Part shown: positions 1 through 61,703 of the stretch, one piece after another
Layout of the letters: the number at the start of each line of letters is the position of its first letter
How positions within the stretch are numbered: the first letter of the stretch is position 1
Assembly: GCF_032444005.1 (NCBI RefSeq)
Contig: NC_091286.1
Span: 1,178,001-1,242,000, forward strand
DNA length: 64,000 nt
Direction: 5' to 3'
Source: Ranitomeya imitator
Lineage: Eukaryota
Translations under genes and position numbers: made by a program
The notes under the pieces: model-generated
The model's database searches: none
The model's input: only the letters and a program-made list of their open reading frames with translations
Told to the model about the DNA's origin: nothing

Positions 1-452
1 ATCAGGCAGAGAAAAATTTGCTGGCTCTGTGTCAGGGTCAGGATGAGGTAGAGATATATTGTCAGAAGTTTAGGAAGTGGTCTGTGCTCACTCAATGGAA
101 TGAATGTGCGCTGGCAGCAATTTTCAGAAAGGGTCTCTCTGAAGCCCTTAAGGATGTCATGGTGGGATTTCCTATGCCTGCTGGTCTGAATGAGTCTATG
201 TCTTTGGCCATTCATATCGGTCGACGCTTGCGTGAGCGTAAAACTGTGCACCATTTGGCGGTATTATCTGAGCATGGACCTGAGCCTATGCAGTGCGATA
301 GGACTTTGACCAGAGCTGAACGGCAAGAACACAGACGTCGGAATGGGCTGTGTTTTTACTGTGGTGATTCCACTCATGCCATCTCCGATTGTCCTAAGCG
401 CACTAAGCGGTTCGCTAGGTTCGCTTGGGTTGCCATGGCTACAAGTCCATAA
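1..452 (+). pseudogene. Gypsy gag C-terminus with zinc knuckle; protease region appears deleted
   Basis: CFYCGDSTHAISDC (CX2CX4HX4C). The sequence then jumps to the post-protease LGLPWLQVHNPVLDW segment with no D[ST]G motif visible. Confidence 0.8.
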
Positions 453-608: not shown

Positions 609-1748
609 TTGATTCCTGGTAGTAAGTTTCCTAAAGGTCGACTGTTTAATTTGTCTGTGCCTGAGCACGCCGCTATGCGGAGTTACGTAAAGGAATCCTT
701 GGAGAAGGGTCATATTCGCCCGTCGTCGTCGTCGCCATTGGGAGCAGGGTTCTTTTTTGTGGCCAAGAAGGATGGTTCGCTGAGACCTTGTATTGATTAC
801 CGCCTTCTAAATAAAATCACGGTCAAATTTCAGTACCCTTTGCCGCTGCTGTCTGATTTGTTTGCTCGGATTAAGGGGGCTAGTTGGTTCACCAAGATAG
901 ATCTTCGTGGTGCGTATAATCTTGTGCGTATTAAACAGGGCGATGAATGGAAAACAGCATTTAATACGCCCGAGGGCCATTTTGAGTACCTGGTTATGCC
1001 ATTCGGGCTTTCTAATGCTCCATCAGTGTTTCAGTCCTTTATGCATGACATCTTCCGAGAGTACCTGGATAAATTCCTGATTGTATACTTGGATGATATT
1101 TTGGTCTTCTCGGATGATTGGGAGTCTCACGTGAAGCAGGTCAGAATGGTGTTCCAGGTCCTGTGTGCGAATTCTTTGTTTGTGAAGGGGTCAAAGTGTC
1201 TCTTTGGTGTTCAGAATGTTTCATTTTTGGGTTTCATTTTTTCCCCTTCTACTATCGAGATGGACCCTGTTAAAGTTCAGGCCATTTATGATTGGACTCA
1301 TCCGACATCTCTGAAGAGTCTGCAAAAGTTCCTGGGCTTTGCTAATTTTTATCGTCGCTTCATCAATAATTTTTCTAGTATTGCTAAACCGTTGACTGAT
1401 TTAACCAAGAAGGGTGCTGATGTGGTCAATTGGTCTTCTGCTGCTGCGGAAGCTTTTCAAGAGTTGAAGCGTCGTTTTTCTTCTGCCCCTGTGTTGTGCC
1501 AACCAGATGTTTCGCTCCCGTTCCAGGTCGAGGTTGATGCTTCTGAGATTGGAGCAGGGGCTGTTTTGTCGCAAAGAAGTTCTGATGGCTCGGTGATGAA
1601 ACCATGCGCCTTCTTTTCCAGGAAGTTTTCGCCTGCTGAGCGTAATTATGATGTGGGCAACCAAGAGTTGCTGGCCATGAAGTGGGCATTCGAGGAGTGG
1701 CGTCATTGGCTTGAAGGAGCTAAGCATCGCCGTGGTGGTCTTGACTGA
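609..1748 (+). pseudogene. Gypsy pol: reverse transcriptase and RNase H (frameshifted into the next ORF)
   Basis: [37 protein letters not shown]; RNase H motifs [14 protein letters not shown] and [12 protein letters not shown]. Confidence 0.95.
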
Positions 1749-3378
1749 TCACAAGAATTTGACTTATCTCGAGTCTGCCAAACGGTTGAATCCTAGACAG
1801 GCTCGTTGGTCGCTGTTTTTCTCCCGTTTTGACTTTGTGGTTTCGTACCTTCCGGGTTCTAAAAATGTGAAGGCGGATGCCCTGTCTAGGAGTTTTGTGC
1901 CCGACTCTCCGGGTTTGTCTGAGCCGGCGGGTATTCTCAAAGAGGGGGTAATTTTGTCTGCCATCTCCCCTGATTTGCGGCGGGTGCTGCAAAAATTTCA
2001 GGCTAATAGACCTGACCGTTGCCCAGCGGAGAAACTGTTTGTCCCTGATAAATGGACGAGTAGAGTTATCTCTGAGGTTCATTGTTCAGTGTTGGCTGGT
2101 CATCCTGGAATCTTGGGTACCGGAGATTTGGAGGCAAGATCCTTCTGGTGGCCGTCTCTGTCGCGGGATGTGCGTTCGTTTGTGCAGTCCTGTGGGATTT
2201 GTGCTCGGGCTAAGCCCTGCTGTTCTCGTGCCAGTGGGTTGCTTTTGCCCTTGCCAGTCCCGAAGAGGCCCTGGACACATATCTCTATGGATTTTATTTC
2301 GGATCTCCCCGTCTCTCAAAAAATGTCAGTCATTTGGGTGGTTTGTGATCGCTTCTCTAAGATGGTCCATTTGGTACCCTTGTCTAAATTGCCTTCCTCC
2401 TCTGATTTGGTGCCATTGTTCTTCCAGTATGTGGTTCGTTTACATGGCATTCCGGCGAACATCGTTTCTGACAGAGGTTCCCAGTTTGTTTCGAGGTTTT
2501 GGCGAGCCTTTTGTGCTAGGATGGGCATTGATTTGTCTTTTTCCTCGGCTTTCCATCCTCAGACAAATGGCCAGACTGAACGAACCAATCAGACCTTGGA
2601 AACATATCTGAGATGTTTTGTTTCTGCTGATCAGGATGATTGGGTGTCCTTTTTGCCTTTGGCTGTGTTCGCCCTTAATAATCGGGCCAGCTCGGGTACT
2701 TTGGTTTCGCTGTTTTTCTGCAATTCTGGTTTCCATCCTCGTTTCTCTTCAGGGCAGGTTGAGTCTTCAGACTGTCCTGGTGTGGATACTGTGGTGGATA
2801 GGTTGCAGCAGATTTGGACTCATGTAGTGGACAATTTGACATTGTCCCAGGAGAAGGCTCAACGTTTTGCTAACCGCAGGCGCTGTGTGGGTCCCCGACT
2901 TCGTGTTGGGGATTTGGTTTGGTTGTCATCTCGTTATATTCCTATGAAAGTTTCCTCTCCTAAGTTTAAGCCTCGTTTCATTGGTCCGTATAGGATTTCT
3001 GAGGTTCTTAATCCTGTGTCTTTTCGTTTGACCCTTCCAGCTTCTTTTTCCATCCATAACGTATTCCATAGGTCATTGTTGCGGAGATACGTGGCACCTG
3101 TGGTTCCATCCGTTGATCCTCCTGCCCCGGTTTTGGTTGAGGGGGAGTTGCAGTATATAGTGGAGAAGATTTTGGATTCTCGTATTTCGAGACGGAAACT
3201 CCAGTACCTGGTTAAGTGGAAGGGTTATGGTCAGGAAGATAATTCCTGGGTCTTTGCCTCTGATGTTCATGCTGCCGATCTGGTTCGTGCCTTTCATTTG
3301 GCTCATCCTGGTCGGCCTGGGGGCTCTGATGAGGGTTCGGTGACCCCTCCTCAAGGGGGGGGGGGGGTACTGTTGTGA
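1711..3378 (+). pseudogene. Gypsy pol: end of RNase H, integrase, GPY/F motif and chromodomain
   Basis: HHCC (EVHCSVLAGHPG...CGIC); DDE motifs (ISMDF, VSDRGSQF, GQTERTNQ); KPRFIGPY; chromodomain YIVEKILDSR...QYLVKWKGYGQEDNSWV. Confidence 0.95.
3353..3367 (+). promoter_or_regulatory. Polypurine tract (plus-strand primer site)
   Basis: AA followed by 13 G, three bases upstream of the LTR start TGTTGTG. Confidence 0.85.
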
Positions 3379-6977: not shown

Positions 6978-8820
6978 CAGTTAAGTCCATATATATTTGG
7001 ACAGAGACAACATTTTTCTAATTTTGGTTCTAGACATTACCACAATGAATTTTAAACAAAACAATTCAGATGCAGTTGAAGTTCAGACTTTCAGCTTTCA
7101 TTTGAGGGTATCCACATTAAAATTGGATGAAGGGTTTAGGAATTTCAGCTCCTTAACATGTGCCACCCTGTTTTTAAAGGGACCAAAAGTAATTGGACAA
7201 TTGACTCCAAGGCTTTTTCATGGACAGGTGTGGGTAATCCCTTCGTTATGTCATTCTCAATTAAGCAGATAAAAGGCCTGGAGTTGATTTGAGGTGCGGT
7301 GCTGCATTTGGAAGGTTTTGCTGTGAAGTAAACATGCGGTAAAGGAGCTCTCTATGCAGGTGAAACAAGCCATCCTTAAGCTGCGAAAACAGAAAAAACC
7401 CATCCGAGAAATTGCTACAATATTAGGAGTGGCAAAATCTACAGTTTGGTACATCCTGAGAAAGAAAGAAAGCACTGGTGAACTCATCAATGCAAAAAGA
7501 CCTGGGCGCCCACGGGAGACAACAGTGGTGGATGATCACAGAATAATCTCCATGGTGAAGAGAAACCCCTTCACAACAGCCGACCAAGTGACCAACACTC
7601 TCCAGGAGGTCGGCGTATCAATATCCAAATCTACCATAAAGAGAAGACTGCATGAAAGTAACTACAGAGGGTTCACTGCACGGTGCAACCACTCATAAGC
7701 ATCAAGAAGAAAAAGGCTAAAAAACATCTAAAAAAGCCGCACAGTTCTGGAAGAACATTCTATAGACAGATGAAACCAACATCAACCTCTACCAGAATGA
7801 TGGAAAGAGAAAAGTATGGGGAAGGCGTGGTACAGCTCATGATCCAAAGCATACCACATCATCTGTAACACCCGGCGGAGGCAGTGTGATGGCGCGGGCA
7901 TGCATAAACCCGGCGGAGGCAGTGTGATGGCGCGGGCATGCATAAACCCGGCGGAGGCAGTGTGATGGCGCGGGCATGCATAAACCCGGCGGAGGCAGTG
8001 TGATGGCGCGGGCATGCATAAACCCGGCGGAGGCAGTGTGATGGCGCGGGCATGCATAAACCCGGCGGAGGCAGTGTGATGGCGCGGGCATGCATAAACC
8101 CGGCGGAGGCAGTGTGATCGCGCGGGCATGCATGGCTGCCAGTGGCACTGGGTCACTAGTGTTTATGGATGATGGGACAAGACAGAAGAATGAATTCTGG
8201 GGTCTTCAGAGACATACTGAGTGCTCAGATCCAGCCAAATGCAGCCAAACTGATTGGTCGTCGTTTCATACTACAGATGGACAATGACCCAAAACATAAA
8301 GCCAAAGCAACACAGGAGTTTATTAAAGCAAAGAAGTGGAATATTCTGGAATGGCCGAGTCAGTCACCTGATCTCAACCCAATTGAGCAGCATTTTACTT
8401 GTAAAAGACTAAACTTCAGACAGAAAGGCCCAGAAACAAACAGCAACTGAAAACCACCGCAGTGAAGGCCGAGCATCAAAAAGGGGGAAACACAGCGTCT
8501 GGTGATGTCCATGAGTTCAAGACTTCAGGCAGTCATTGCCAACAAAAGGTTTTCAGCCAAGTACTAGAAATGAACATTTTATTTACAATTATTGAATCTG
8601 TCCAATTACTTTTGGTCCCTTTATAAACAGGGTGGCACATGTTAAGGAGCTGAAACTCCTAAACCCTTCATCCAATTTTAATGTGGATACCCTCAAATGA
8701 AAGCTGAAAGTCTGAACTTCAACTGCATTTGAATTGTTTTGTTTAAAATTCTTTGTGGTAATGTCTGTAACCAAAATTAGAAAAATGTTGTCTCCGTCCA
8801 AATATATATGGACTTAACTG
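6978..8820 (+). mobile_element. Tc1 DNA transposon with a degenerate transposase
   Basis: TA flanks at 6976-6977 and 8821-8822. TIRs of about 220 bp (CAGTTAAGTCCATATATATTTGGAC...). Transposase fragments ELSMQVKQAIL, RPGRPRETT, LQMDNDPKH, WPSQSPDLNPIE. Confidence 0.95.
7868..8133 (+). repeat. 7 x 38-bp tandem repeat derived from the transposase coding sequence
   Basis: Unit AAACCCGGCGGAGGCAGTGTGATGGCGCGGGCATGCAT corresponds to the K(H/P)GGGSVMA(W/R)ACM segment. Confidence 0.95.
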
Positions 8821-9352
8821 TATAATACATCTCCCATATAGAATAATGCAGACTTGTATGGTATATTACAGCCTCCATATAGTATAATACAGCCTCCATA
8901 TAGTATAATGCAGCCCCCATATAGTATAATGCTGCCTCCACATATTATAATGCAGCCCCTATATAGTATAAAACAGCTCTCATATGCTATAATGCAGCCC
9001 CCATATAGTATAATACAGCTCTTATATGGTATAATACAGCCTCAATATAGTATAATACATATAATACAGCCCCCATATGGTATAATACTGCCTCTACATA
9101 GTATAATGCAGCCTCCATACAGTATAATACTGCCCCCATACGGTATAAAGTGGCCTCCACATAATATATTACAGCACCATATAGTATAATACAGTCCACA
9201 TATAGTATAATGCAGCCTCCATATAATATCATACAACCTTCATATGGTATAAAGCAGCCTCCATATAGTATAATACAGCTCCCATACAGTATAATACAGC
9301 ACACATATAGTATCATGCAGCCTCCATATGATAAAATGCAGCCTCCATAAAG
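8821..9352. repeat. 22-23 bp minisatellite, segment 3
   Basis: Same unit as the earlier segments. Confidence 0.85.
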
Positions 9353-9643
9353 TACAGGGTGAGCCATTTATATGGATATAAAGGCACAGATGATTGGCCT
9401 CGGGGAGACCAAAACATCCAACACCGCGGAGACACCATCACGTGTTTCTCAACGCAGTGATTCCAGAACACTGCCCCCATCCCTTATGGGAAATATGCAG
9501 ATGCATGTAAAGAAGCTGCGGAGACACCATCACGTGTTTCTCGACGCAAGCAGTGAATAGCCAGGCCTTTCCCCGGGAAGGAACAACCACGGGAAGGGCA
9601 GCATCCTGTGAAGGAAAGCCACCTATGCCAAGCATGGTATCCA

Positions 9644-9688
9644 TCCACAGACAGCTGTTTCGGGGTTTTTGCCCCTCATCAGTGTGGA
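9644..9688 (-). ncRNA. Minimal type I hammerhead ribozyme with an intact core
   Basis: Minus strand reads UCCACA-CUGAUGA-GGGG(CAAAAA)CCCC-GAAA-CAGCUGUC^UGUGGA: 6-bp stem I, 4-bp stem II, palindromic stem III (ACAGCUGU). The predicted GUC cleavage site lies between 9650 and 9649. Confidence 0.93.
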
Positions 9689-10124
9689 GTAGGAATCTGG
9701 CTATTAGGAGCAGTGCCTAGTAAAAAGGCTATAAAGGCACAGATGATTGGCCTCGGGGAGACCAAAACATCCAACACCGCGGAGACACCATCACGTGTTT
9801 CTCAACGCAGTGATTCCAGAACACTGCCCCCATCCCTTATGGGAAATATGCAGATGCATGTAAAGAAGCTGCGGAGACACCATCACGTGTTTCTCGACGC
9901 AAGCAGTGAATAGCCAGGCCTTTCCCCGGGAAGGAACAACCACGGGAAGGGCAGCATCCTGTGAAGGAAAGCCACCTATGCCAAGCATGTGTTCTGGAAT
10001 CACTGCGTTGAGAAACACGTGATGGTGTCTCCGCGGTGTTGGATGTTTTGGTCTCCCCGAGGCCAATCATCTGTGCCTTTATAGCCTTTTTACTAGGCAC
10101 TGCTCCTAATAGCCAGATTCCTAC

Positions 10125-10169
10125 TCCACACTGATGAGGGGCAAAAACCCCAAAACAGCTGTCTGTGGA
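10125..10169 (+). ncRNA. Hammerhead ribozyme copy with a G12A core mutation (predicted inactive)
   Basis: TCCACA CTGATGA GGGG CAAAAA CCCC AAAA CAGCTGTC TGTGGA; GAAA has become AAAA at 10152. Confidence 0.88.
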
Positions 10170-10716
10170 TGGATACCATGCTTGGCATAGGTGGCTTTCC
10201 TTCACAGGATGCTGCCCTTCCCGTGGTTGTTCCTTCCCGGGGAAAGGCCTGGCTATTCACTGCTTGCGTCGAGAAACACGTGATGGTGTCTCCGCAGCTT
10301 CTTTACATGAACCATTTATATGGATACGCATAAATGAAATGGGAATGGTGGGTGATATTAACTTCCTGTTTGCGGCAGGAGGGGAGGGGAAAACCTTTTC
10401 AGGATGGGTGGTGACCGTGGCGGACATTTTGAAGTCAGCCATTTTGGATCCAACTTTATTTTTTTCAATGGGAGGAGGATCATGGGATACATAAAACTCA
10501 TTGAGAATTTCACAAGAAACACAATGGTGTGCTTGGTTTTAACATAACTTTATTCTTTCATGAGTTATTTACAAGTTTGTGACCACTTATTGTGTTCAAA
10601 GTGCTGCCCATTGTGTGGGATTGTCAACGCAACCCTCTTCTCCCACTCATGACACACTGATAGCAACACCGCAGAAGAAATGCTAGCACAGGCTTCCAGT
10701 ATCCGCTGTTTCAGAT

Positions 10717-11074
10717 GCTGCACATCTCGTATCTTCACAGCATAGACAATTGCCTTCAGATGACCCCAACGATAAGTCTAATGGGGTCAGATCGGGAGAC
10801 CTAGGTGGCCGTTCAACTGGCCCACGACGATCAATCCACTTTCCAGGAAACTGTTCATGCACTGAAGATGGCACGTTCGCGGAGTTTTTCCAGCAAGATG
10901 GTGCCCATTATGGGTGTCAGGTCTGAGCATTCCTACATGAACAGTTTCCTGGAAAGTGGATTGGTCGTGGGCCAGAAGAATGGCCACAGTCTCCCGATCT
11001 GACCCCATTAGACTTTTATCTTTGGGGTCATCTGAAGGCAATTGTCTATGCTGTGAAGATACGAGATGTGCAGC
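10717..11074. repeat. Fold-back: inverted arms of about 140 bp made of transposase sequence
   Basis: 10717-10859 is the near reverse complement of 10936-11074, with a 76-bp spacer. Confidence 0.88.
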
Positions 11075-11112
11075 GGAATATGTCGGCGCTATAGAAATAA
11101 AATTATTATTAT

Positions 11113-12986
11113 CCCAACTTGCCATTCTACGAAAACTAACCCCCTTCTCCTGGTCCACATCCTCTATAAAGTACTTGGGTATCTGGATCACTAGGGACCC
11201 TATGGACTTATTTAGATCTAATTTTTCCCCTCTAATAAAAAAAACTAGAAGCACTAATGAAATCATATAATCTTCCCACTTTATCATGGATAGGACGTAT
11301 CAACGTATTTAAAGCTTACATTATGCCTATCCTATTGTACTCTATGAGTATGGTGCCCATTCATCTTCCCCTTACATTCTTTAAAAATATAAGGTCCTTA
11401 ATAATTAAATTTGTATGGAGAAATAAGCCAGCTAGGCTACCCTTTAAATTGTTAACATGTCCCACTTCTTATGGAGGTTTAGGATTACCTGACCCCTATA
11501 CATATTATAAAGCGATACATCTAAGTAGATGGCTGAGAATAGTAATTGGTATTGAGAGGGGCATGCTGGACATGCTGGATGTGGCTTTGCTGGATATTGG
11601 GGGAATACCAGTCTTATGGTCACGCTCGAAACCAACGACTTCATTGGGTTTGGATGACATAACTCTAGCTACCCTCCATGTTAAGCGGACAGTTTTAAAT
11701 GATCGTCCACCGGATTCACTCCCATCATCCTTGACCCCTATTGCAGTCATTCCATATCTAGTTGATCCTGATTTCAAAGATTCTTATAATTTATGGTCAA
11801 AACTCCCTAGGGATTCCCTCTCTAGCCTCTATGAAGGGAAAAATTTTAAGAACAATATTTGGCCTAGCAACGCCACGAAGTCTCCAAAAAATTTCTTGCA
11901 GGAACTTCACACTAAGCGTATTCTTACGGAATTTAGAGTGAGGTTCCCACAGAAGTCAAATTGGTCATGGTTGGACCTTATGCTTAAAACGGGTACAACT
12001 AGATATAAAACTATATCTCGCTCGTACCACCAACTTGTTACCCCCTCTCAACCCTTTAAACCATCATTTGTTTATTCCTGGGAATCTGAACTTAACTTTA
12101 ACTTCTCAGATGACCAGATCTCAAAGATGTTGAAGTCTGCCACGGGATTCTCTCGATGCATCCTGCTGCAGGAAAATGCATATAAAATATTAACCAGATG
12201 GCACCTGACGCCGGTCAAACTCCAACATTTAGGCTTGGCGGACTCTGACTTGTGCTGGCGTTGTCGGGTCGCCCAGGGGAACCATGCACACATATTCTGG
12301 GAGTGCGGAGGGATCAGGGATTTCTGGGGGGAGGTAAATTCGACACTTAAAAAGTTAAAATTAATTAAAACTGACCTACTGGCGGTTGAGGCCGTCCTCT
12401 CGTGCCCGACAAACAACTTTAAACCCACTAGGCATGGCCTTCTATCCTTGATACTCAGTGCCGCAAAGCACTTAATAACCACTCACTGGAAGAGTGTATC
12501 CCCCCCAACACTAGGTGAATGGTTCAACAAAATTGACCACATTTATAGAATGGAGGAACTATCGAGCTGGGAGACGCATGCCCATGATCGCTTTGTCCTG
12601 AACTGGCTTCCATGGAGAAATTTTCGTTCCGTTGCTCCTTAACATTGCAACTTATGTCTTCTTAATACCGAGAATTCATGCTACCATACTGTTTGCATTT
12701 TGAGTGATATAACCATGTGTACTGAAACTGTTATGTTCACTGTTTCCCCTTCCCTTTTTCCTATTTCCCCTCCTCGAACCACTACTCCGCAGGTCAACCC
12801 CCCCCCCCCTCCTAACCCCTCCTTCCCCCTCCCTTTCCCTTCCCTCTCCTACCATTTCCCAAAGTTTGTGGTCCGGAGTCACTTATAGCCATTGATATAG
12901 CAGATACGACTTATTTACTTGTCTTAACATTACTTGCATGTAACGTCTCTGACCTTTATGTTAAATAAAGAATTTACAAAAAAAAA
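11113..12986 (+). mobile_element. 5'-truncated L1-clade LINE (ORF2 C-terminal half, 3' UTR, polyA)
   Basis: IKYLGI, LSWIGRINVFK, GGLGLPD, zinc knuckle CWRC...HIFWEC. AATAAA at about 12964, then polyA. 19-bp TSD GAAATAAAATTATTATTAT (11094-11112 and 12987-13005). Confidence 0.95.
11257..12642 (+). pseudogene. L1 ORF2 C-terminal region, 461 open codons
   Basis: Post-RT region and CCHC motif of L1 ORF2; 5' truncated. Confidence 0.9.
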
Positions 12987-15099: not shown

Positions 15100-18000
15100 C
15101 AGATCAATGCCATCTTGTGATACATCGTATGGATCGAATTCCATATCGCTTTCTCTTCCTCTTGCCACAAGTAGTCGTCCTCCGTACCATCTAATGAATT
15201 TGATATGCCGCACTTCTTGAAAGACTTGATTACTGTTTCTGCACCAATATCATTCCAGGCTTTTAGGAGAAACTTGCACAAAACATCCAACTGTGGAGCG
15301 CGCACGTTCCCTCCTTTTGTGAATGACTTTTCGCAGCTATTCATTCCACTGTTCTCGAATGCGATCTTTGAATGTCTTGTTTGGCGCACTTCCAGTGGCT
15401 GTACCAACGATGCCCATCCTGCAGGAACGACTGCCACATTTAGTCTGCAAGCCTTTGCTTGGTGCTGGGAGTTAAATGAACATATCCCACACCAGTAGAC
15501 TACATCCACCTTGTCGCCTGCCCCATACATTATCAAGCCATAGCTTTACCCCTTCCTCATACATCCAGCCTTGAGTTTCGGCCTTGTTTTTCTTTGAACA
15601 ATAATCATTGGTCTCAGTTTGGCGCCATTAGCTGGGCATCCTAATACCACTGTAAAACTGGACTTCTCATGCCCCATTGTTTTAATTAAAATTGTTTTTT
15701 CACCTTTTTGATGGACAGTTATTTCCAACCATATCATTGGAGTTTCATCCATATTTCCAATACTACTTAACGGATAGCCATGTTTAGTGCGCTGTTGTAT
15801 TACGTATCGATGGAAACTATTCACTTTGCTATCAAGATCTGCAAGCAATGTTTGGGCATTATTCGTCTTTAGCCTCGGTCCCATATTCTGCCTTGCCATG
15901 GATCCAGTCCACCAGGGTACAGTGGCCATGAATCCAGTACACCAGGGTACAGTGCCATGAATCCAGTACACCAGGGTACAGTGCCATGAATCCAGTACAC
16001 CAGGGTACAGTGGCCATGAATCCAGTACACCAGGGTACAGTGCCATGAATCCAGTACACCAGGGTACAGTGCCATGAATCCAGTCCACCAGGGTACAGTG
16101 CCATGAATCCAGTCCACCAGGGTACAGTGGCCATGAATCCAGTACACCAGGGTACAGTGCCATGAATCCAGTCCACCAGGGTACAGTGCCATGAATCCAG
16201 TCCACCAGGGTACAGTGGCCATGAATCCAGTACACCAGGGTACAGTGCCATGAATCCAGTCCACCAGGGTACAGTGGCCATGAATCCAGTCCACCAGGGT
16301 ACAGTGGCCATGAATCCAGTCCACCAGGGTACAGTGGCCATGAATCCAGTCCACCAGGGTACAGTGGCCATGAATCCAGTCCACCAGGGTACAGTGGCCA
16401 TGAATCCAGTCCACCAGGGTACAGTGCCATGAATCCAGTACACCAGGGTACAGTGGCCATGAATCCAGTCCACCAGGGTACAGTGGCCATGAATCCAGTC
16501 CACAAAGGTACAGTGCCATGAATCCAGTCCACCAGGGTACAGTGGCCATGAATCCAGTACACCAGGGTACAGTGCCATGGATCCAGTCCACCAGGGTACA
16601 GTGGCCATGAATCCAGTCCACCAGGGTACAGTGGCCATGAATCCAGTCCACAAAGGTACAGTGCCATGAATCCAGTCCACCAGGGTACAGTGGCCATGAA
16701 TCCAGTACACCAGGGTACAGTGCCATGAATCCAGTCCACCAGGGTACAGTGGCCATGGATCCAGTCCACCAGGGTACAGTGGCCATGAATCCAGTCCACC
16801 AGGGTACAGTGGCCATGAATCCAGTCCACAAAGGTACAGTGCCATGAATCCAGTCCACCAGGGTACAGTGGCCATGAATCCAGTACACCAGGGTACAGTG
16901 CCATGGATCCAGTCCACCAGGGTACAGTGGCCATGAATCCAGTCCACCAGGGTACAGTGGCCATGAATCCAGTCCACAAAGGTACAGTGCCATGAATCCA
17001 GTCCACCAGGGTACAGTGGCCATGAATCCAGTACACCAGGGTACAGTGCCATGAATCCAGTCCACCAGGGTACAGTGGCCATGAATCCAGTACACCAGGG
17101 TACAGTGCCATGAATCCAGTCCACCAGGGTACAGTGGCCATGAATCCAGTCCACCAGGGTACAGTGCCATGAATCCAGTCCACCAGGGTACAGTGGCCAT
17201 GAATCCAGTCCACCAGGGTACAGTGCCATGAATCCAGTCCACAAAGGTACAGTGCCATGAATCCAGTCCACCAGGGTACAGTGGCCATGAATCCAGTACA
17301 CCAGGGTACAGTGCCATGAATCCAGTACACCAGGGTACAGTGCCATGAATCCAGTCCACCAGGGTACAGTGGCCATGAATCCAGTCCACCAGGGTACAGT
17401 GGCCATGAATCCAGTCCACCAGGGTACAGTGGCCATGAATCCAGTCCACCAGGGTACAGTGGCCATGAATCCAGTCCACCAGGGTACAGTGGCCATGAAT
17501 CCAGTACACCAGGGTACAGTGCCATGAATCCAGTCCACAAAGGTACAGTGCCATGAATCCAGTCCACCAGGGTACAGTGCCATGAATCCAGTCCACCAGG
17601 GTACAGTGCCATGAATCCAGTCCACCAGGGTACAGTGGCCATGAATCCAGTACACCAGGGTACAGTGCCATGAATCCAGTCCACCAGGGTACAGTGGCCA
17701 TGAATCCAGTACACCAGGGTACAGTGCCATGAATCCAGTACACCAGGGTACAGTGCCATGAATCCAGTCCACCAGGGTACAGTGCCATGAATCCAGTCCA
17801 CCAGGGTACAGTGGCCATGGATCCAGTCCACCAGGGTACAGTGCCATGAATCCAGTCCACCAGGGTACAGTGCCATGAATCCAGTCCACCAGGGTACAGT
17901 GCCATGAATCCAGTCCACCAGGGTACAGTGGCCATGAATCCAGTACACCAGGGTACAGTGCCATGGATCCAGTCCACCAGGGTACAGTGGCCATGGATCC

Positions 18001-19393
18001 AGTACACCAGGGTACAGTGCCATGAATCCAGTCCACCAGGGTACAGTGCCATGAATCCAGTCCACCAGGGTACAGTGCCATGAATTCAGTACACCAGGGT
18101 ACAGTGCCATGAATCCAGTACACCAGGGTACAGTGCCATGAATCCAGTACACCAGGGTACAGTGCCATGAATCCAGTCCACCAGGGTACAGTGCCATGAA
18201 TCCAGTCCACCAGGGTACAGTGCCATGAATCCAGTCCACCAGGGTACAGTGGCCATGAATCCAGTCCACCAGGGTACAGTGGCCATGAATCCAGTCCACC
18301 AGGGTACAGTGGCCATGGATCCAGTCCACCAGGGTACAGTGGCCATGGATCCAGTCCACCAGGGTACAGTGCCATGAATCCAGTACACCAGGGTACAGTG
18401 CCATGAATCCAGTACACCAGGGTACAGTGGCCATGAATCCAGTACACCAGGGTACAGTGCCATGAATCCAGTACACCAGGGTACAGTGCCATGAATCCAG
18501 TCCACCAGGGTACAGTGGCCATGAATCCAGTCCACCAGGGTACAGTGGCCATGGATCCAGTCCACCAGGGTACAGTGCCATGAATCCAGTCCACCAGGGT
18601 ACAATGGCCATGAATCCAGTCCACCAGGGAACAGTGGCCATGGATCCAGTCCACCAGGGTACAGTGCCATGAATCCAGTCCACCAGGGTACAGTGGCCAT
18701 GAATCCAGTACACCAGGGTACAGTGCCATGAATCCAGTCCACCAGGGTACAGTGGCCATGGATCCAGTCCACCAGGGTACAGTGCCATGAATCCAGTCCA
18801 CCAGGGTACAGTGGCCATGAATCCAGTCCACCAGGGTACAGTGGCCATGGATCCAGTCCACCAGGGTACAGTGCCATGAATCCAGTCCAGTCTACCAGGG
18901 TACAGTGGCCATGAATCCAGTCCACCAGGGTACAGTGGCCATGAATCCAGACCACCAGGGTACAGTGGCCATGAATCCAGTCCACCAGGGTACAGTGGCC
19001 ATGAATCCAGTCCAACAGGGTACAGTGGCCATGAATCCAGTCCAACAGGGTACAGTGGCCTTACATCTGTTGCTGTGATGTGCTTAGATTTTGCCCACTG
19101 AAGTGCAAACAAACATATTTGATTTGGTGTCACTACATACCCGCTTTGGCGGAGCTCACCGTGTCTGCTGCATGGTTTCCAAGTTCTGGCCAATGTGGGG
19201 TGCCTCTTCTTACTGCACACTTACCCCTTGGCACACTCTTTAATGCTTTCTCATTTGCTTTCCAGTCCCGAACCATCTTTTCTGATACTCCATATTGTCT
19301 TGCAGCAGCGCAGTTATTATGTTCCATAGCAAAGTTTACAACTTTAAGTTTGAATCTGGCTTCATATTTCTTACTTCTTGCTGGTGGAGCCAT
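15100..19393 (-). pseudogene. pogo (POGK/Passer-like) transposase: Brinker-type DBD, CENP-B HTH and DDE_1, split by a minisatellite
   Basis: MAPPARSKKYEARFKLKVV...NNCAAARQYGVSEKMVRDW; GNMDETPM; GHEKSSFTVVL; LLVWDMF; SLVQPLEV; KSFKKCGISN. Confidence 0.88.
15895..19060. repeat. 29/30-bp minisatellite, about 107 units
   Basis: Unit GCCATGAATCCAGT(C/A)CACCAGGGTACAGT(G), lying inside the pogo transposase. Confidence 0.97.
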
Positions 19394-19747: not shown

Positions 19748-19977
19748 GATTCTTTACTGTTAGGGCAGTTATAATCTGGAATTGCTTGCCTGAGGAGGTG
19801 GTGATGGCGAACTCAGTCGAGGGGTTCAAGAGAGGCCTGGATGTCTTCCCGGAGCAGAACAATATTGTATCTTACAGTTATTAGGATCTTTAGAAGGACA
19901 TAGATCTGGGGATTTATTCTGACGGAATATAGGCTGAAATGTCTTTTTTTTCGGCCTTGCTAACTGTGTTACTATGT
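19748..19977 (+). mobile_element. CR1 LINE 3' fragment
   Basis: Matches the end of ORF2 and the 3' UTR of the CR1 at 28200-30976, including the degenerate 8-bp tail. Confidence 0.88.
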
Positions 19978-21218
19978 CAAAATGCAGCCCCAATATAATA
20001 TAATGCAGCCCCATATAGTATAATGCAGCCACCATATAGTATAATGCAGCCCCATATAGTATAATGCATCCCCATATAGTATAATGCAGCCCCCATATAC
20101 TATAATGCAACATCCATATTGTATAATGCATCACCCATATAGTATAATGCAGACCCCATATAGTATAACGCAGCCCCCATATAGTATAATGCAGCCCCCA
20201 TATAGTATAATGCAGCCACCATATAGTATAACGCAGCCACCATATAGTATAATGCAGCCCCCATATAGTATAATGCAGCCCCATATAGTATAATGCAGCC
20301 ACCATACAGTATAACGCAGCCCCCATATAGTATAATGCAGTCCCCATATAGTATAATGCAGCCCAATATAGTATAATGCATCCCCATATAGTATAATGCA
20401 GCCACCATATAGTATAATGCAGCCCCCATATAGTATAATGCAGCCCCCATATAGTATAATGCAGCCCCCATATAGTATAATAGAGTTCCCATATGGTATA
20501 ATGTAGCCCCCATCAAAAATAATACAAACCTATATAGTATAATGCAACCCCCTTATGGTATAGAGCAGCCTCCATATAGTAAAATGCAGCTGAATATAGT
20601 ATAATACATCCACCATATAGTATAGTGCAGCCTCCTTATAGTATAGTGCAGTCCTCAAATAGTATAATGCAACCCCATATAGTATAATATAGCCCCCATA
20701 TAGTATAATGAAAATACCATATAGTATAATGTAGCCCCCTCATAGTATACTGCATCCACTATATAGTATAATGAATCTGCCATATAGTATAATGCAGCCC
20801 CATATCATAAAATGTAGCCCTCATATAGTTAATGCAGCTCCCATGTAGTATAATGCAGCCTCCACATAGTTTAATGCAAAACTCATATAGTATAATGCAG
20901 CGTGATATAGCATAGTGCAGCCCCCATATAGCATAATGAAGTCCCCATATAGCATAATGCAGTCTTCATATAGTATAATGCAGACCAATATAGTATAATG
21001 CACCCCCATATAAGCTAGAGTATAATAAAGCCCCCATACAGTATAATACATTCCCCATAGACCTTCAAACAGAATAATGCAGCCCCCAATATAGTGTAAT
21101 GCAGCCCCATATAGTGTAATGCAGCCCTCATATAGTATAATGCAGCCCCATATAGTATAATAGAGTTCCCATATGGTATAATGTAGCCCCCATCTAGTAT
21201 AATACAAACCTATATAGT
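19978..21218. repeat. 22-23 bp minisatellite, segment 5 (most homogeneous)
   Basis: Near-perfect ATATAGTATAATGCAGCCCCC units. Confidence 0.92.
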
Positions 21219-21537
21219 GCAAATTGTCTCTTCAGAGAGGAAGAGAACTAGAACTCTAGTGCCACCTATTGGAAGTAGCGATCCTAACAGTCAATGTCGA
21301 CCCTTTAACGAGCCTTGTCACATGACTTAGGATAATAGCCAAACCAGAATCTCAATTTGCAGACACTGTGTTTCAGGGTACTGCCCCTCATCAGTGCAAA
21401 GTGGAGATCTAATTCTAGTTCTCTTCCTCTCTGAAGAGACAATTTGCATATTTCCCAGAGGAGCATTGCGGCTTTAAGTCTCCTCACCTCGACATGCTTA
21501 TCATGTCACTCTCCGCAAGGAGAAACGATACTTCTTG
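21219..21537 (-). mobile_element. Hammerhead-ribozyme retroelement family B (319 bp, direct plus inverted segment)
   Basis: Flanked by AAACCTATA(T/C)AGT (21206-21218 and 21538-21550). Perfect 36-bp inverted repeat at 21218-21253 and 21413-21448. Hammerhead at 21356-21400. Confidence 0.85.
21356..21400 (-). ncRNA. Minimal type I hammerhead ribozyme, family B
   Basis: Minus strand reads UUUGCA-CUGAUGA-GGGG(CAGUA)CCCU-GAAA-CACAGUGUC^UGCAAA. Stem I is 6 bp, G10.1 pairs with U11.1 as a wobble, and the predicted GUC cleavage site lies between 21362 and 21361. Confidence 0.88.
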
Positions 21538-21829
21538 AAACCTATACAGTATAATGGTAAACACACCAGGGCCTGCCAGATGATAAAACCAGGCCACAAA
21601 CAATGTTCAGTTCAAGATATATATTTATTTGTACCAAAAAAAAGGAATAAAACATCCATATATTAACAATACAATCTCATAATGTGGAAAAATACCTCCG
21701 AACCAATGTCTGGTTTAAAGTGCGGTGCATACAAGCGGACCAACAACCCCTCTTAAGTACATAGTGTGGTAAGTATAAATTGATTTATTCCTGGTTGTTG
21801 CTGCTTAATTATAAATCTCTAGGTCAGCC

Positions 21830-21955
21830 TTGATGACCCCCCTTATGGTATAGAGCAGCCTCCATATAGTAAAATGCAGCCAAATATAGTATAATACATC
21901 CACCATATAGTATAGTGCAGTCCTCAAATGCAATCCCATATAGTATAATGCAGAC
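21830..21955. repeat. 22-23 bp minisatellite, segment 6
   Basis: Near copy of about 20546-20660. Confidence 0.75.
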
Positions 21956-22320
21956 CTGATTGCCCTTACAAATTTATGGTAGAGGGCTACCTGAAGGCCC
22001 TTCCAAATATTTGGTAGAGTGCCGCCTGAGGCCCCTGCCAAATTAATTGTAGAGGGCAGCTTGAAGGCCCTCCAAAATGTATGTCAACATTGTCAACCAA
22101 TGATCTGCACCAAAATTATTCCTGCAGTAATAGCAGCTTTTTAAAATATAAAAGAGCCTTGCCAAAATTGAGTGAGGGCCGCCTGATTGCAATGATAAAT
22201 TTATGGTAGAGAGACGCCTGAAGGCCCCCCAAATATATGGTAGAGGACAGCCTGAGGGACCCTCCCAAATGTATGGTGGGGACCACCTGAGGACCGTCCC
22301 AAATGTATGTCAACAGATGA

Positions 22321-22820: not shown

Positions 22821-22851
22821 CCGTGTTTCCCTAAGCTGACATCCTGTAGAA

Positions 22852-23013
22852 CAGAGGTCCCCAACTCCAGTCCTCAAGGCCCACCAACAGGTCATGTTTT
22901 CAGGATTTCCTTTGCATTGCACAGGTGATGCAATTATTACCTGGGCAAGACTAAGGAAATCCTGAAAACATGACATGTTGGTGGGCCTTGAGGACTGGAG
23001 TTGGGGACCTCTG
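22852..23013. mobile_element. Palindromic hAT-type MITE, 162 bp
   Basis: Long TIR CAGAGGTCCCCAACTCCAGTCCTCAAGGCCCACCAACA...; 8-bp TSD CTGTAGAA (22844-22851 and 23014-23021). Confidence 0.92.
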
Positions 23014-23049
23014 CTGTAGAATGTAAAATCTGTCCCTCATGATGGAGCC

Positions 23050-31459: not shown

Positions 31460-31594
31460 TTAAAGATGGAGTGAATGCTTAGCCTAAGGGGTAAAGGAGA
31501 TGGTGCATTATTATTATTTTCACTTTTTTATTGCCTTATATACAAGTCACTAGATTGTGGTCCGATTCTAACACATCAGGTATTCTACAATATG

Positions 31595-32762
31595 TATGTA
31601 TGTATATAGCAGCCACATAGTATATAGCACAGGCCACGTAGTATATAGGAATACTACGTGGCCTGTGGTATATACCATGTGACTGCTATATACATACATA
31701 CATATTGTAGAATACCCGATGTGTTAATATAGGCCACGCAGTAAATAACACAGCCCACACAGTATATAGCAGCCACGCAGTATATAGCAGCCACGTAGTA
31801 TATAACACAGCCCACGTAGTATGTAACACTGGCCACGTAATATATAACACAGCCCACGTAATATATAGCACAGCCCACATAGTATCTAACAGTGGCCACG
31901 TAGTATATAGCAAGCAATATAGAACACTGCCACGTAGTATATAACACTACCCACGTAGTACATAGCAGCCATGTAGTATATAACGCAGCCCACGCAGTAT
32001 ATAACACTGGCCACGTAATATATAACACAGCCCACACAGTATAGAACACAGCCCACGTAGTATATAACACAGCCCACGCAGTATAGAACACTACCCACGT
32101 AGTATATAACACAGCCCACACAGTATATAGCAGCCACGTAGTATATAACACTGCCCAGACAGTATATAGCAGCCACGTAGTATATAACACAGCCCATGCA
32201 GTATATAGCAGCCACGTAGTATATAACACAGCCCATGCAGTATATAGCAGCCACGTAGTATATAACACTGCCCACGCAGTATATAGCAGCCACGTAGTAT
32301 ATAACACTGCCCAGACAGTATATAGCAGCCACGTAGTATATAACACAGCCCATGCAGTACATAGCAGCCACGTAGTGTATAACACAGCCCACGCAGTATA
32401 TAGCAGCCACGTAGTATATAACACTGCCCACGCAGTATATAGCAGCCACGTAGTATATAACACTGCCCAGACAGTATATAGCAGCCACATAGTATATAAC
32501 ACTGCCCATGCAGTACATAGCAGCCACGTAGTATATAACACAGCCCACGCAGTATATAGCAGCCACGTAGTATATAACACAGCCCACGCAGTATAGAACA
32601 CAGCCCACGTAGTATATAACACAGCCCACATAGTATATAGCAGCCACGTAGTATATAACACTGCCTAGACAGTATATAGCAGCCACGTAGTACATAACAC
32701 AGCCCACGGAGTATGTCACACAGCCCACGTAGTATATAACACAGCCCACATAGTATACAGCA
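31595..32762. repeat. AT-rich 19-22 bp minisatellite inside the Helitron
   Basis: Alternating CAGCCACGTAGTATATA(A/G)CA and CACAGCCCACGCAGTATATAG units. Confidence 0.9.
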
Positions 32763-48200: not shown

Positions 48201-50082
48201 AGCGGGCACTGACTGCGGGGAGTATGGAGCGGGCACTGACTGCGGGGAGTGTGGAGCGGGCACTGACTGCGGGGAGTGTGGAGCGGGCACTGAATGCGGG
48301 GAGTATGGAGCGGGAACTGACTGCGGGGAGTATGGAGCGGGCACTGAATGCGGGGAGTGTGGAGCGGGCACTGAATGCGGGGAGTGTGGAGCGGGCGCCG
48401 GGCACTGACTGCGGGGAGTGTGGAGCGGGCACTGAATGCGGGGAGTATGGAGCGGGCGCCGGGCACTGACTGCGGGGAGTATGGAGCGGGCGCCGGGCAC
48501 TGACTGCGGGGAGTGTGGAGCGGGCACTGACTGCGGGGAGTATGGAGCGGGCACTGACTGCGGGGAGTGTGGAGCGGGCACTGACTGCGGGGAGTGTGGA
48601 GCGGGCACTGAATGCGGGGAGTGTGGAGCGGGCACTGAATGCGGGGAGTATGGAGCGGGAACTGACTGCGGGGAGTGTGGAGCGGGCACTGAATGCGGGG
48701 AGTGTGGAGCGGGCACTGACTGCGGGGAGTATGGAGCGGGCACTGACTGCGGGGAGTATGGAGCGGGCACTGACTGCGGGGAGTGTGGAGCGGGCACTGA
48801 ATGCGGGGAGTATGGAGCGGGAACTGACTGCGGGGAGTGTGGAGCGGGCACTGAATGCGGGGAGTGTGGAGCGGGCACTGAATGCGGGGAGTGTGGAGCG
48901 GGCGCCGGGCACTGACTGCGGGGAGTGTGGAGCGGGCACTGAATGCGGGGAGTATGGAGCGGGCGCCGGGCACTGACTGCGGGGAGTATGGAGCGGGCGC
49001 CGGGCACTGACTGCGGGGAGTGTGGAGCGGGCACTGACTGCGGGGAGTATGGAGCGGGCACTGACTGCGGGGAGTGTGGAGCGGGCACTGACTGCGGGGA
49101 GTATGGAGCGGGCACTGACTGCGGGGAGTATGGAGCGGGCACTGACTGCGGGGAGTATGGAGCGGGCACTGACTGCGGGGAGTATGGAGCGGGAACTGAC
49201 TGCGGGGAGTGTGGAGCGGGCACTGACTGCGGGGAGTATGGAGCGGGCACTGACTGCGGGGAGTGTGGAGCGGGCACTGACTGCGGGGAGTATGGAGCGG
49301 GCACTGACTGCGGGGAGTATGGAGCGGGCACTGACTGCGGGGAGTATGGAGCGGGCACTGACTGCGGGGAGTATGGAGCGGGAACTGACTGCGGGGAGTG
49401 TGGAGCGGGAACTGACTGCGGGGAGTGTGGAGCGGGAACTGACTGCGGGGAGTATGGAGCGGGAACTGACTGCGGGGAGTGTGGAGCGGGAACTGACTGC
49501 GGGGAGTGTGGAGCGGGCACTGAATGCGGGGAGTGTGGAGCGGGCACTGACTGCGGGGAGTATGGAGCGGGCACTGACTGCGGGGAGTATGGAGCGGGCA
49601 CTGACTGCGGGGAGTATGGAGCGGGCACTGACTGCGGGGAGTGTGGAGCGGGCACTGACTGCGGGGAGTGTGGAGCGGGCACTGAATGCGGGGAGTGTGG
49701 AGCGGGCACTGAATGCGGGGAGTGTGGAGCGGGCGCCGGGCACTGACTGCGGGGAGTGTGGAGCGGGCACTGAATGCGGGGATTATGGAGCGGGCACTGA
49801 ATGCGGGGAGTGTGGAGCGGGCACTGAATGCGGGGAGTGTGGAGCGGGCGCCGGGCACTGACTGCGGGGAGTGTGGAGCGGGCACTGAATGCGGGGAGTG
49901 TGGAGCGGGCACTGAATGCGGGGAGTATGGAGCGGGCGCCGGGCACTGACTGCGGGGAGTGTGGAGCGGGCACTGAATGCGGGGAGTGTGGAGCGGGCAC
50001 TGAATGCGGGGAGTATGGAGCGGGCGCCGGGCACTGACTGCGGGGAGTATGGAGCGGGCACTGACTGCGGGGAGTATGGAGG
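33201..50082. repeat. GC-rich 27/34-bp minisatellite, about 16.9 kb
   Basis: Unit GCACTGACTGCGGGGAGTATGGAGCGG, with or without GCGCCGG. Higher-order duplications with periods 2418 and 2121 bp are visible in the ORF track. Confidence 0.98.
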
Positions 50083-60750: not shown

Positions 60751-60786
60751 GCGGTGGTCCCTCCCTGAATGTACAATCTCCGCAAT

Positions 60787-60869
60787 TCTCTCCGTGGTGC
60801 CATCATGGGCGTCAGAGAAAAATATAGTTCTTACCGATAACGGTATTTCTCTGGGCCCATGACGGCACC
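60787..60869 (+). other. DIRS internal complementary region (ICR)
   Basis: Its reverse complement reads the element's 3' end joined to its 5' end: GGTAAGAACTATATT|TTTCTCTGACGCC. Confidence 0.92.
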
Positions 60870-61700: not shown

Positions 61701-61703
61701 TAG

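What the first reader, a model, noticed from the sequence alone, without database searches (positions are those of the whole stretch)
9379..10308. Hammerhead ribozyme in a 353-bp tandem unit with a TSD: retrozyme family A
Seen: a complete minimal type I hammerhead on the minus strand (9644-9688) inside a non-coding 353-bp unit. The unit is present as about 1.7 direct copies plus a 319-bp inverted copy, all bracketed by an exact 15-bp target duplication that splits the TIR of an older mariner. Known: short tandem units with minimal type I hammerheads and palindromic stem III are the hallmark of newt satellite 2, Penelope-like pseudo-LTRs and non-LTR retrozymes, which yield self-cleaved monomers and circular RNAs and often cleave as dimers. 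Inference: this is a self-cleaving, non-autonomous retroelement family. The ORF track does not show it.
Basis: partly seen in the sequence, partly recalled or inferred. Interest (0 to 1): 0.9.

Follow-up and report, generated by a model that had tools for sequence, protein, structure and literature searches.

The report
Hammerhead retrozyme insertion, tandem plus inverted
This is a young copy of a very abundant, non-coding 353-bp mobile repeat that carries a self-cleaving hammerhead ribozyme, a kind of element (non-LTR retrozyme) already well described in amphibians; its insertion scars are unusually clean, but the element itself is ordinary for this genome.

Summary
A complete type I hammerhead lies on the minus strand (extended 9640-9694, core 9644-9688, predicted cut 9650|9649). 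It sits in a 353-bp non-coding unit present as 1.73 direct copies (9379-9989) plus a 321-nt inverted copy (9989-10309). An exact 15-bp duplication (9364-9378 / 10312-10326) brackets the whole, in the terminal sequence of a Tc1/mariner-like remnant.

Public-run contigs show a very high-copy family, roughly 10^4 unit equivalents, present under three organism labels. No variant reaching 10% touches the ribozyme core or stems.

The kind is known: newt satellite 2, axolotl retrozymes, and 57 Xenopus families linked to Penelope-like elements (PLEs). Other first-reader notes report many such elements in this genome.

Caveats:
- This locus has only one intact hammerhead, so it cannot release unit-length RNA by itself. 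Copy 2 is truncated before its ribozyme, and the inverted copy carries G12A.
- Expression and cleavage remain untested.

The useful extra is the architecture. Both target strands appear to have primed cDNA from ribozyme-sense RNA, each starting at one of the unit's only two TAAAG sites. This is the PLE insertion signature.

Verdict: new member of a known kind, modest interest.

The parts
9353..9378 (-). TA dinucleotide plus the terminal 24 bp of a Tc1/mariner-like remnant (CAGGGTGAGCCATTTATATGGATA). The element continues at 10327.
   Evidence: The empty-site reconstruction is continuous. Transposase-like C-terminal pieces lie downstream on the minus strand. Atlas lead SETMAR/DDE_3 at 0.90.
9364..9378 (.). 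Left copy of the 15-bp target-site duplication CCATTTATATGGATA (11 of 15 A/T).
   Evidence: only two occurrences in the window, 0.14 expected.
9379..9731 (-). Full 353-bp retrozyme unit (direct copy 1). The ribozyme-sense RNA is the minus strand. The unit starts with TAAAGG.
   Evidence: No Pfam match in its ORFs. RNA folds better than shuffles: z -3.85 sense, -4.55 antisense.
9640..9694 (-). Intact type I hammerhead with extended helix I. Core 9644-9688. Predicted self-cleavage after GUC, between 9650 and 9649. The core CpG (C11.1-G12) is at 9662/9661.
   Evidence: Only one variant of at least 10% among family contigs falls here: 9667, in loop 2.
9426..9548 (.). Internal 31-nt duplication within the unit (9426-9456 and 9518-9548, 97% identical).
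9732..9989 (-). Direct copy 2, 258 nt. It ends 8 nt before the extended hammerhead fold would begin, and 13-14 nt short of the position of a hammerhead-cleaved RNA 5' end.
   Evidence: identical to copy 1.
9989..10309 (+). Inverted copy, 321 nt, the reverse complement of 9504-9824. It spans a unit junction. It is joined to the direct part at 9989 with 1 nt (G) shared.
10119..10173 (+). Hammerhead of the inverted copy, carrying G12 to A (10152) at the core CpG. Predicted inactive.
   Evidence: the single mismatch. Not detected by Rfam.
10310..10311 (.). Two A residues between the insert and the right TSD. They are either untemplated filler or part of a 19-nt TSD with one mismatch.
10312..10326 (.). 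Right copy of the 15-bp target-site duplication.
10327..11075 (-). Rest of the Tc1/mariner-like remnant, with an internal palindromic rearrangement (10717-10860 / 10936-11074).

Best explanation
This is one recent insertion of a non-autonomous, non-coding retroelement of the metazoan non-LTR retrozyme class. It is probably mobilised in trans by a Penelope-like element (PLE) reverse transcriptase/GIY-YIG endonuclease.

Family life cycle (inferred from the published class, not shown here):
1. Tandem copies are transcribed into multimeric RNA.
2. The hammerhead cuts after GUC. Its helix III is only one base pair plus the palindromic loop AGCU, so it probably acts as a dimer through an 8-bp ACAGCUGU helix.
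3. The 353-nt monomers, with 5'-OH and 2',3'-cyclic phosphate ends, are circularised by a tRNA ligase.
4. Linear multimers or circles serve as templates for target-primed reverse transcription.

This locus (read from the sequence):
- An AT-rich site in a mariner-like terminus was nicked on both strands about 15 bp apart.
- The top-strand 3' end (...GGATA) primed a cDNA of 611 nt, 1.73 units. The template was therefore longer than a monomer, or circular.
- The bottom-strand 3' end primed a second cDNA of 321 nt.
- Both cDNAs are copies of ribozyme-sense RNA. Both start at internal positions, next to the only two TAAAG sites of the unit.
- The two cDNA ends were joined head to head at 9989 with 1 nt of microhomology.

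The result is the PLE-type 'partial tandem plus inverted 5'-truncated copy' flanked by a TSD. With only one intact hammerhead, the copy is a dead end for monomer production.
For: Ribozyme and unit:
- Hammerhead fold.
- Dimer helix: -43.9 kcal/mol against 2 x -19.2.
- 353-bp period, inverted copy and TSD.
- Youth: 1 difference in about 580 aligned nt, and a perfect TSD.

Family abundance and spread:
- 20 runs from 8 studies hold the unit, including runs of only 9-20 million letters.
- In X1, 8364 contigs were laid. Summed word depth on the unit is about 0.8-1.9 million, against 33 on the locus-specific left junction.
- An organism-C contig crosses the head-to-tail junction 9729->9377 with one mismatch.
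- No variant of at least 10% lies in the core or stems; the only one in the ribozyme is in loop 2.

RT start sites:
- TAAAG occurs only at 9379 and 9508, the two cDNA starts.
- Independent contigs with unrelated flanks end at 9378 (X16) and 9501 (X15), within 3 nt of the two starts used here (table 7).

Literature:
- Retrozyme definition, and dimer-dependent amphibian hammerheads with a 1-bp helix III: PMC7229834.
- Retrozymes in all 7 amphibians sampled, related to PLE pLTRs: 10.64898/2026.07.22.740005.
- PLE insertions as a partial tandem plus an inverted 5'-truncated copy: PMC8557442.
- A purified PLE protein nicks and extends both target strands, prefers AT-rich DNA and initiates reverse transcription internally at two sites: PMC11167929.
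Against: - No RNA evidence is secure. The 'RNA?' runs are guesses and are held as contigs. With about 10^4 genomic copies, slight DNA carry-over would explain their depth.
- Cleavage is untested. The Rfam score is below the family threshold (24.3 versus 52).
- No PLE is in the window. The RT genes present are Ty3/gypsy, DIRS-like and CR1-like, so the mobilising enzyme is inferred.
- The two RT starts are about 125 nt apart, not the 30-40 nt reported for the PLE 'tail'.
- The nick sites do not fall exactly after ATT.
- The two cDNAs do not abut on a single RNA. Depending on register they overlap by 93 nt or leave a 260-nt gap, so two templates or a template switch are needed.
- The copy-number figure comes from summed contig depth, which the tool warns is not a copy number.
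Confidence: 0.8

Rival explanations
1. Ordinary satellite DNA. The 353-bp repeat spreads and rearranges only at the DNA level, by unequal exchange, re-integration of extrachromosomal circles, or fold-back replication. The hammerhead is a passenger and no retrotransposition is involved.
For: The window is packed with satellites: 21-, 27- and 30-bp arrays. Newt satellite 2 was first described as a satellite (PMC7229834). Li et al. discuss local amplification into arrays.
Against: A short 1.7-copy block plus an inverted copy sits inside a transposon terminus, bracketed by an exact 15-bp duplication of the target. That marks a staggered-cut insertion, not exchange within an array. Both halves are oriented as cDNAs of the same RNA strand. 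Independent copies end at the same two unit positions.
Confidence: 0.08
2. A severely 5'-truncated insertion of an autonomous Penelope-like element. What is seen would be only its pseudo-LTR, not a separate non-autonomous family.
For: PLE pLTRs carry hammerheads, and PLE insertions have exactly this tandem/inverted form. Contigs in X15, X16 and X20 share the hammerhead core 9649-9684 but have other flanks, so the same ribozyme exists in other elements.
Against: The head-to-tail period is 353 bp with no ORF between copies. The junction 9726/9727 is covered about as deeply as the rest of the unit in the DNA run, and is crossed by an organism-C contig. In a PLE tandem the period would be the whole element, several kb.
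Confidence: 0.07
3. The inverted part is an assembly artefact (palindromic chimeric read), and the real locus holds only direct copies.
For: Inverted repeats of near-identical sequence are error-prone in assemblies (noted for PLEs in PMC8557442). I could not check the 9989 junction in independent deep DNA reads.
Against: The inverted copy is not a mirror of its neighbour. It is permuted (unit positions 98..1 then 353..131), carries a private substitution, and runs straight into the second TSD copy and the continuation of the mariner remnant. Other first-reader notes report the same architecture at other loci (unchecked).
Confidence: 0.05

Closest known systems
Newt satellite 2 and axolotl retrozyme Rtz_331 with HHR_Amex1 (Epstein and Gall 1987; Cervera and de la Pena 2020, PMC7229834)
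   Same: Unit of about 330-350 bp, non-coding and tandem. Type I hammerhead with loop 1-loop 2 architecture and a helix III of one base pair capped by a palindromic tetraloop, so efficient cleavage is expected only as a dimer. Tens of thousands of copies.
   Different: Sequence homology to those units was not testable here. This locus is a 1.7-mer with an inverted partner rather than a long array. Unit G+C is 52%, whereas the paper describes mostly under 50%.
Xenopus and other vertebrate non-LTR retrozyme families (Li, Clavereau, Pollet 2026, bioRxiv 10.64898/2026.07.22.740005)
   Same: Amphibian families average 316 bp. They occur as monomers, dimers and multimers, dispersed, and are related to PLE pLTRs.
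   Different: By that paper's criterion (two consecutive units with complete hammerheads) this locus is not an 'active' copy. As far as I searched, the paper does not analyse TSDs or inverted copies of non-LTR retrozymes; this locus shows both.
Penelope-like element insertions (Craig et al. 2021, PMC8557442; Frangieh et al. 2024, PMC11167929)
   Same: Partial tandem plus an inverted 5'-truncated copy at the 5' end, a hammerhead, an AT-rich target, internal initiation of reverse transcription at two sites, and extension from both target strands.
   Different: No RT/GIY-YIG ORF. The period is 353 bp. The two start sites are about 125 nt apart rather than 30-40 nt.
Rfam RF02275 Hammerhead_HH9 (intronic amniote hammerhead)
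   Same: Same core, the same CAAAAA loop 2, and an interrupted helix I with a UAC bulge.
   Different: The score of 24.3 bits is far below the gathering score of 52. Helix III is much shorter. The genomic context is a repeat, not a conserved intron.
LINE-1 twin priming (5' inversion); comparison from my own knowledge
   Same: Two cDNAs are primed from the two target strands and joined head to head inside one TSD-flanked insertion.
   Different: No poly(A). The cDNA starts are sequence-specific and internal. The two cDNAs do not abut on a single template.

Membership tests
Metazoan non-LTR retrozyme | Type I hammerhead with a complete catalytic core in the repeat unit | tested here: met
   The core CUGAUGA...GAAA...GUC is intact in copy 1.
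Metazoan non-LTR retrozyme | Short (about 170-400 bp) non-coding unit in head-to-tail copies, without LTR, PBS or PPT | tested here: met
   353 bp, 1.73 direct copies. Stops in all frames and no Pfam match. The head-to-tail junction is also seen in an organism-C contig. PBS and PPT were not searched specifically.
Metazoan non-LTR retrozyme | TSD longer than the 4 bp of LTR retrozymes, when present | tested here: met
   15 bp exact.
Metazoan non-LTR retrozyme | Multi-copy family in the genome | tested here: met
   8364 contigs in X1, and depth on the unit about 10^4 times that of the junction. Dispersal to separate loci is inferred from contigs with other flanks and from unchecked notes.
Metazoan non-LTR retrozyme | Expressed as unit-length linear and circular RNA | not testable with these tools
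   Only contigs of runs guessed to be RNA were available. They cannot show ends, strand or circularity, and DNA carry-over is not excluded.
Metazoan non-LTR retrozyme | Self-cleavage of the transcript | not testable with these tools
   Predicted from the intact core and the dimer helix. Needs in vitro transcription.
Metazoan non-LTR retrozyme ('active' locus in the sense of Li et al. 2026) | At least two consecutive units with complete hammerheads | tested here: not met
   Copy 2 ends at 9989, before its ribozyme. The inverted copy has G12A and lies on the other strand.
Metazoan non-LTR retrozyme | Co-occurrence with autonomous PLEs | not tested
   No PLE in this window. One unchecked note mentions a PLE pseudo-LTR elsewhere in the genome.
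Penelope-like element | ORF with telomerase-like RT and GIY-YIG endonuclease between pLTRs | tested here: not met
   No such ORF in or next to the insert.
Rfam Hammerhead_HH9 (RF02275) | Score at or above the curated gathering threshold (52 bits) | tested here: not met
   24.3 bits; no hit at gathering thresholds.

The most novel reading that the evidence does not exclude
The locus may be a natural record of how retrozymes are reverse-transcribed.
- Both strands of a roughly 15-bp staggered cut primed cDNA synthesis on ribozyme-sense RNA.
- Priming occurred at two sequence-specific internal start sites, each just 3' of a YCUUUA motif; these are the unit's only two TAAAG sites.
- Independent copies end at the same two sites.
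- The longer cDNA stops 13-14 nt from the 5' end that hammerhead cleavage would create.
- The read-through copy carries the G12A change that would prevent cleavage.

If this holds genome-wide, it would give in vivo support for dual-strand, internally initiated TPRT by PLE enzymes acting on retrozyme RNA. It would also tie hammerhead cleavage to the 5' boundary of the cDNA.
Probability: 0.3. Interest if true: 0.55.

Novelty: new member of a known kind. Interest (0 to 1): 0.3.

Why it matters
Hammerhead retrozymes are among the few genome-encoded sources of small ribozyme-processed circular RNAs in animals, and how they are mobilised is still inferred rather than shown. This copy adds nothing new in kind. 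It is, however, young and clean enough to read the insertion mechanism from:
- one substitution among its copies and a perfect TSD;
- both cDNA starts and the head-to-head joint visible.

A genome-wide tally of such scars could test the link to Penelope-like elements and the role of the ribozyme in defining template ends.

The locus also shows that the conserved C11.1-G12 step of the hammerhead core is a CpG. In a methylated vertebrate genome this step is therefore a likely point of decay: G12A in the inverted copy here, and C11.1 to U in the other hammerhead at 21358-21408.

Tried and rejected
- Rfam at gathering thresholds over the whole window: no hit. The permissive whole-window search lost even the HH9 hit and gave only sub-threshold miRNA-like matches on palindromic repeats. 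The second hammerhead at 21358-21408 is not recognised by any Rfam model even at E up to 10.
- Exact-pattern scans for the hammerhead in metagenome and viral contig collections: no match.
- The ribozyme string is absent from the held literature and from the one supplementary file held for PMC7229834.
- The search of earlier findings by place and by sequence: blank. By the words 'Penelope GIY-YIG reverse transcriptase': blank.
- Pfam and PDB sequence searches on the short mariner-like pieces: nothing. One call failed on a wrong reading frame and was corrected.
- Covariation within the family could not be tested, because no common variant falls in a stem.
- The lower density of common variants in the hammerhead (1 of 21 in 56 of 353 nt) is not significant; my binomial estimate is P about 0.13.
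- Reads were laid on unit 1 and its left junction, so the 9989 and right-hand junctions were not checked in reads and no silent control stretch was laid. Expression therefore stays open.
- Considered and rejected: a coding function of the 101-122-aa ORFs that run through the copies (no family match; 353 is not a multiple of 3), and two successive insertions (the second would have had to land exactly at the first one's TSD boundary without a TSD of its own).

Full report
**1. What is in the sequence**

The plus strand 9379-9989 holds 1.73 head-to-tail copies of a 353-bp unit. The stretch 9989-10309 is the reverse complement of 9504-9824, that is, unit positions 98..1 followed by 353..131. The repeat finder places the direct copies at 9374-9726 and 9727-9989, but 9374-9378 belong to the flank; the one 'mismatch' there is GGATA in the flank against GGCTA in the unit. 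Apart from that, the two direct copies are identical. The inverted copy differs from them at one base, 10152 A for G.

The 15-mer CCATTTATATGGATA stands directly before the insert (9364-9378). It stands again two bases (AA) after it (10312-10326). It occurs nowhere else in the window, where 0.14 matches are expected even with two mismatches allowed. Taking out the insert and one copy of the 15-mer restores TA|CAGGGTGAGCCATTTATATGGATACGCATAAATG....

**2. The ribozyme**

On the minus strand the RNA reads UCC-UACU-CCACA CUGAUGA GGGG-CAAAAA-CCCC GAAA C-AGCU-G UC|UGUGG-AU-GGA (9694-9640), with the cut predicted between 9650 and 9649.

- Rfam's curated thresholds report nothing.
- The permissive search aligns all 77 positions of Hammerhead_HH9 at 24.3 bits, E=0.0022.
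- The core pattern occurs twice in the window against 0.11 expected.
- My scan that requires all three helices finds the same two sites, and none in 300 simulated windows.

Helix III is A15.1-U16.1 plus one C-G pair closed by the palindromic loop AGCU. This is the form described for newt satellite 2 and axolotl HHR_Amex1, which cleave poorly alone and well as dimers (PMC7229834). In agreement, two copies cofold through an 8-bp ACAGCUGU helix at -43.9 kcal/mol, against 2 x -19.2 for monomers.

The second hammerhead in the window (21358-21408, minus strand) has a different helix I (UUUGCA/UGCAAA against CCACA/UGUGG). That gives three double, compensatory changes, which supports the fold across families. 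Within family A the stems do not vary, so covariation there is untestable.

**3. The family**

The unit is held by 20 runs of 8 studies under three organism labels, including runs of only 9-20 million letters.

In the DNA run X1, which may be the source sample, 8364 contigs were laid. The summed word depth on the unit is 0.8-1.9 million, against 33 on the locus-specific left junction. This suggests on the order of 10^4 unit equivalents. The tool warns that this is not a copy number, so I give it only as an order of magnitude.

A contig from organism C crosses the head-to-tail junction with a single mismatch.

Twenty-one positions show a variant in at least 10% of depth. Only one lies in the 56-nt ribozyme, and it is in loop 2 (CAAAAA to CAAAUA). 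None touches the core or a stem. The deficit is suggestive but not significant; my binomial estimate is P about 0.13. Only 2 of the 21 are at CpGs, so most are probably subfamily markers.

Contigs in three runs match only the ribozyme core 9649-9684 and continue into other sequence. The same hammerhead therefore sits in other elements as well.

The unit RNA folds well beyond shuffled controls on both strands, z -3.85 and -4.55, as reported for retrozyme circles. Its ORFs have stops in every frame and no Pfam match.

**4. How the insertion was probably made**

Orientation is decisive here.
- The strand extended from the top-strand end of the TSD (...GGATA-3') is 9379 onwards.
- The strand extended from the bottom-strand end (...AAATGG-3') is the complement of 10311 downwards.
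- Both are antisense to the ribozyme, so both are cDNAs of ribozyme-sense RNA.

The first cDNA is 611 nt, so its template was longer than one unit, or circular. The two meet at 9989 with one shared G.

In ribozyme-sense orientation the result is an inverted 5'-truncated copy followed by a partial tandem. That is the hallmark of PLE insertions (PMC8557442). A purified PLE protein nicks and extends both target strands, prefers AT-rich DNA, and starts reverse transcription at two internal sites that are not homologous to the target (PMC11167929).

Here the TSD is 73% A+T. Both cDNAs begin at the only two TAAAG sites of the unit: 9379, and 9508 with 4-6 extra bases. Two independent contigs with unrelated flanks end at 9378 (run X16) and 9501 (run X15), within 3 nt of the starts used here and in the same direction (table 7). 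I read these as two preferred RT start sites. That rests on few contigs and is an inference.

The direct cDNA stops 13-14 nt short of the 5' end that hammerhead cleavage would create. The inverted cDNA reads through its hammerhead, which carries G12A. Whether these two facts are connected is speculation.

Unchecked first-reader notes from other pieces of this genome describe the same architecture with 13-16-bp TSDs.

**5. What this locus can and cannot do**

Copy 2 ends at 9989, eight bases before its ribozyme would begin. The inverted ribozyme lies on the other strand and has lost G12, the general base, at the core CpG. A transcript of either strand therefore carries at most one working cleavage site, so this locus cannot release a 353-nt RNA. 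It is a recent dead-end copy of an active family.

The other hammerhead in the window has the complementary CpG decay (C11.1 to U, giving a G-U pair at the base of helix II). This points to the C11.1-G12 step as a weak point of hammerheads in methylated genomes.

**6. Surroundings**

The flank is the terminus of a Tc1/mariner-like remnant on the minus strand. It has a TA at 9353-9354 and transposase-like C-terminal pieces such as ...WPQSPDLTPLDFYLWGHLKAIVY... and ...HNGQHFEH. The family assignment rests only on an Atlas lead (SETMAR/DDE_3, 0.90), since Pfam and PDB searches were blank. No second terminus is in the window.

The region is rich in repeats:
- 21-, 27- and 30-bp satellites;
- Ty3/gypsy, DIRS-like and CR1-like elements;
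- no PLE gene.

**7. Comparison and verdict**

All testable defining features of metazoan non-LTR retrozymes are met. Expression and cleavage were not testable. The 'two consecutive hammerheads' criterion for an active locus is not met.

The kind has been known since newt satellite 2. It is described for axolotl (about 120,000 motifs) and for all seven amphibians in a 2026 survey, which ties it to PLE pLTRs. In this scan, 222 of 1004 notes on this genome mention hammerheads, and one names a 353-bp family elsewhere, so the scan has found this before on other DNA.

I file it as a new member of a known kind, with interest 0.3. The one part worth following is the readable insertion scar (section 4). 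It could be turned into a genome-wide test of dual-strand, internally initiated reverse transcription of retrozyme RNA.

Noticed in passing
window 21218-21837, hammerhead 21358-21408 (-): A second, sequence-unrelated type I hammerhead (AUCUC-CAC-UUUGCA CUGAUGA GGGG-CAGUA-CCCU GAAA CACAGUG UC UGCAAA-UU-GAGAU) lies in a roughly 620-bp insert within the 21-bp satellite. C11.1 is U (CpG decay), giving a G-U pair at the base of helix II. A 36-nt perfect inverted repeat (21218-21253 / 21413-21448) flanks it. Comparison with the uninterrupted satellite copy at 20510-20575 suggests a small target deletion rather than a clear TSD. No Rfam model recognises it.
   Followed up: partly
window 9489-9504 (+) and 21442-21457 (-): Families A and B share a GGGAAATATGCA(G/A)AT box, 15 of 16 identical, but in opposite orientation relative to their hammerheads. 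In B it contains an exact octamer ATGCAAAT. From memory, newt satellite 2 is transcribed from an snRNA-type promoter with an octamer element, so this may be a promoter or enhancer box. Untested.
   Followed up: no
window 33233-50081: A 27-bp satellite (CGGGCACTGACTGCGGGGAGTATGGAG), 583 copies at 89% match. It produces stop-free 'ORFs' of up to 4321 codons in several frames; these are artefacts of the repeat.
   Followed up: partly
window 15895-19060: A 30-bp satellite (GCCATGAATCCAGTCCACCAGGGTACAGTG), 107 copies at 94% match. It likewise gives long spurious ORFs.
   Followed up: partly
window 8820-9354, 19967-21217, 21838-21960: A 21-bp satellite (TATAATACAGCCTCCATATAG and variants) occurs in three blocks. 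The mariner-like remnant and the family B element are both inserted in or beside it. An 83-nt stretch at 21838-21920 is 98% identical to 20548-20630, which points to a segmental duplication of the array.
   Followed up: partly
window 10717-11074: The mariner-like remnant contains an internal palindrome: 10717-10860 is the inverted repeat of 10936-11074, at 97-100% in four blocks. The C-terminal part of the transposase is therefore present twice, head to head.
   Followed up: no
window 609-3378; 11257-12642; 56897-60862; 61434-62645 (-): Other retroelements in the window: Ty3/gypsy pol (RT, RNase H, integrase, chromodomain); a LINE ORF2 C-terminal part with a CCHC-like motif (no Pfam match); a DIRS-like element with RT, a LAP2alpha-like region and a tyrosine-recombinase-like C-terminus; and a CR1-like LINE RT. 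None is a Penelope-like element.
   Followed up: partly
window 22847-23018 and 31570-31725: Long near-perfect hairpins or repeats give sub-threshold Rfam hits to plant and other miRNA families: MIR477 at 45 bits on both strands, and MIR6217 at 74 bits against a 110-bit threshold. These are most likely palindromic or low-complexity repeats, not miRNA genes.
   Followed up: no
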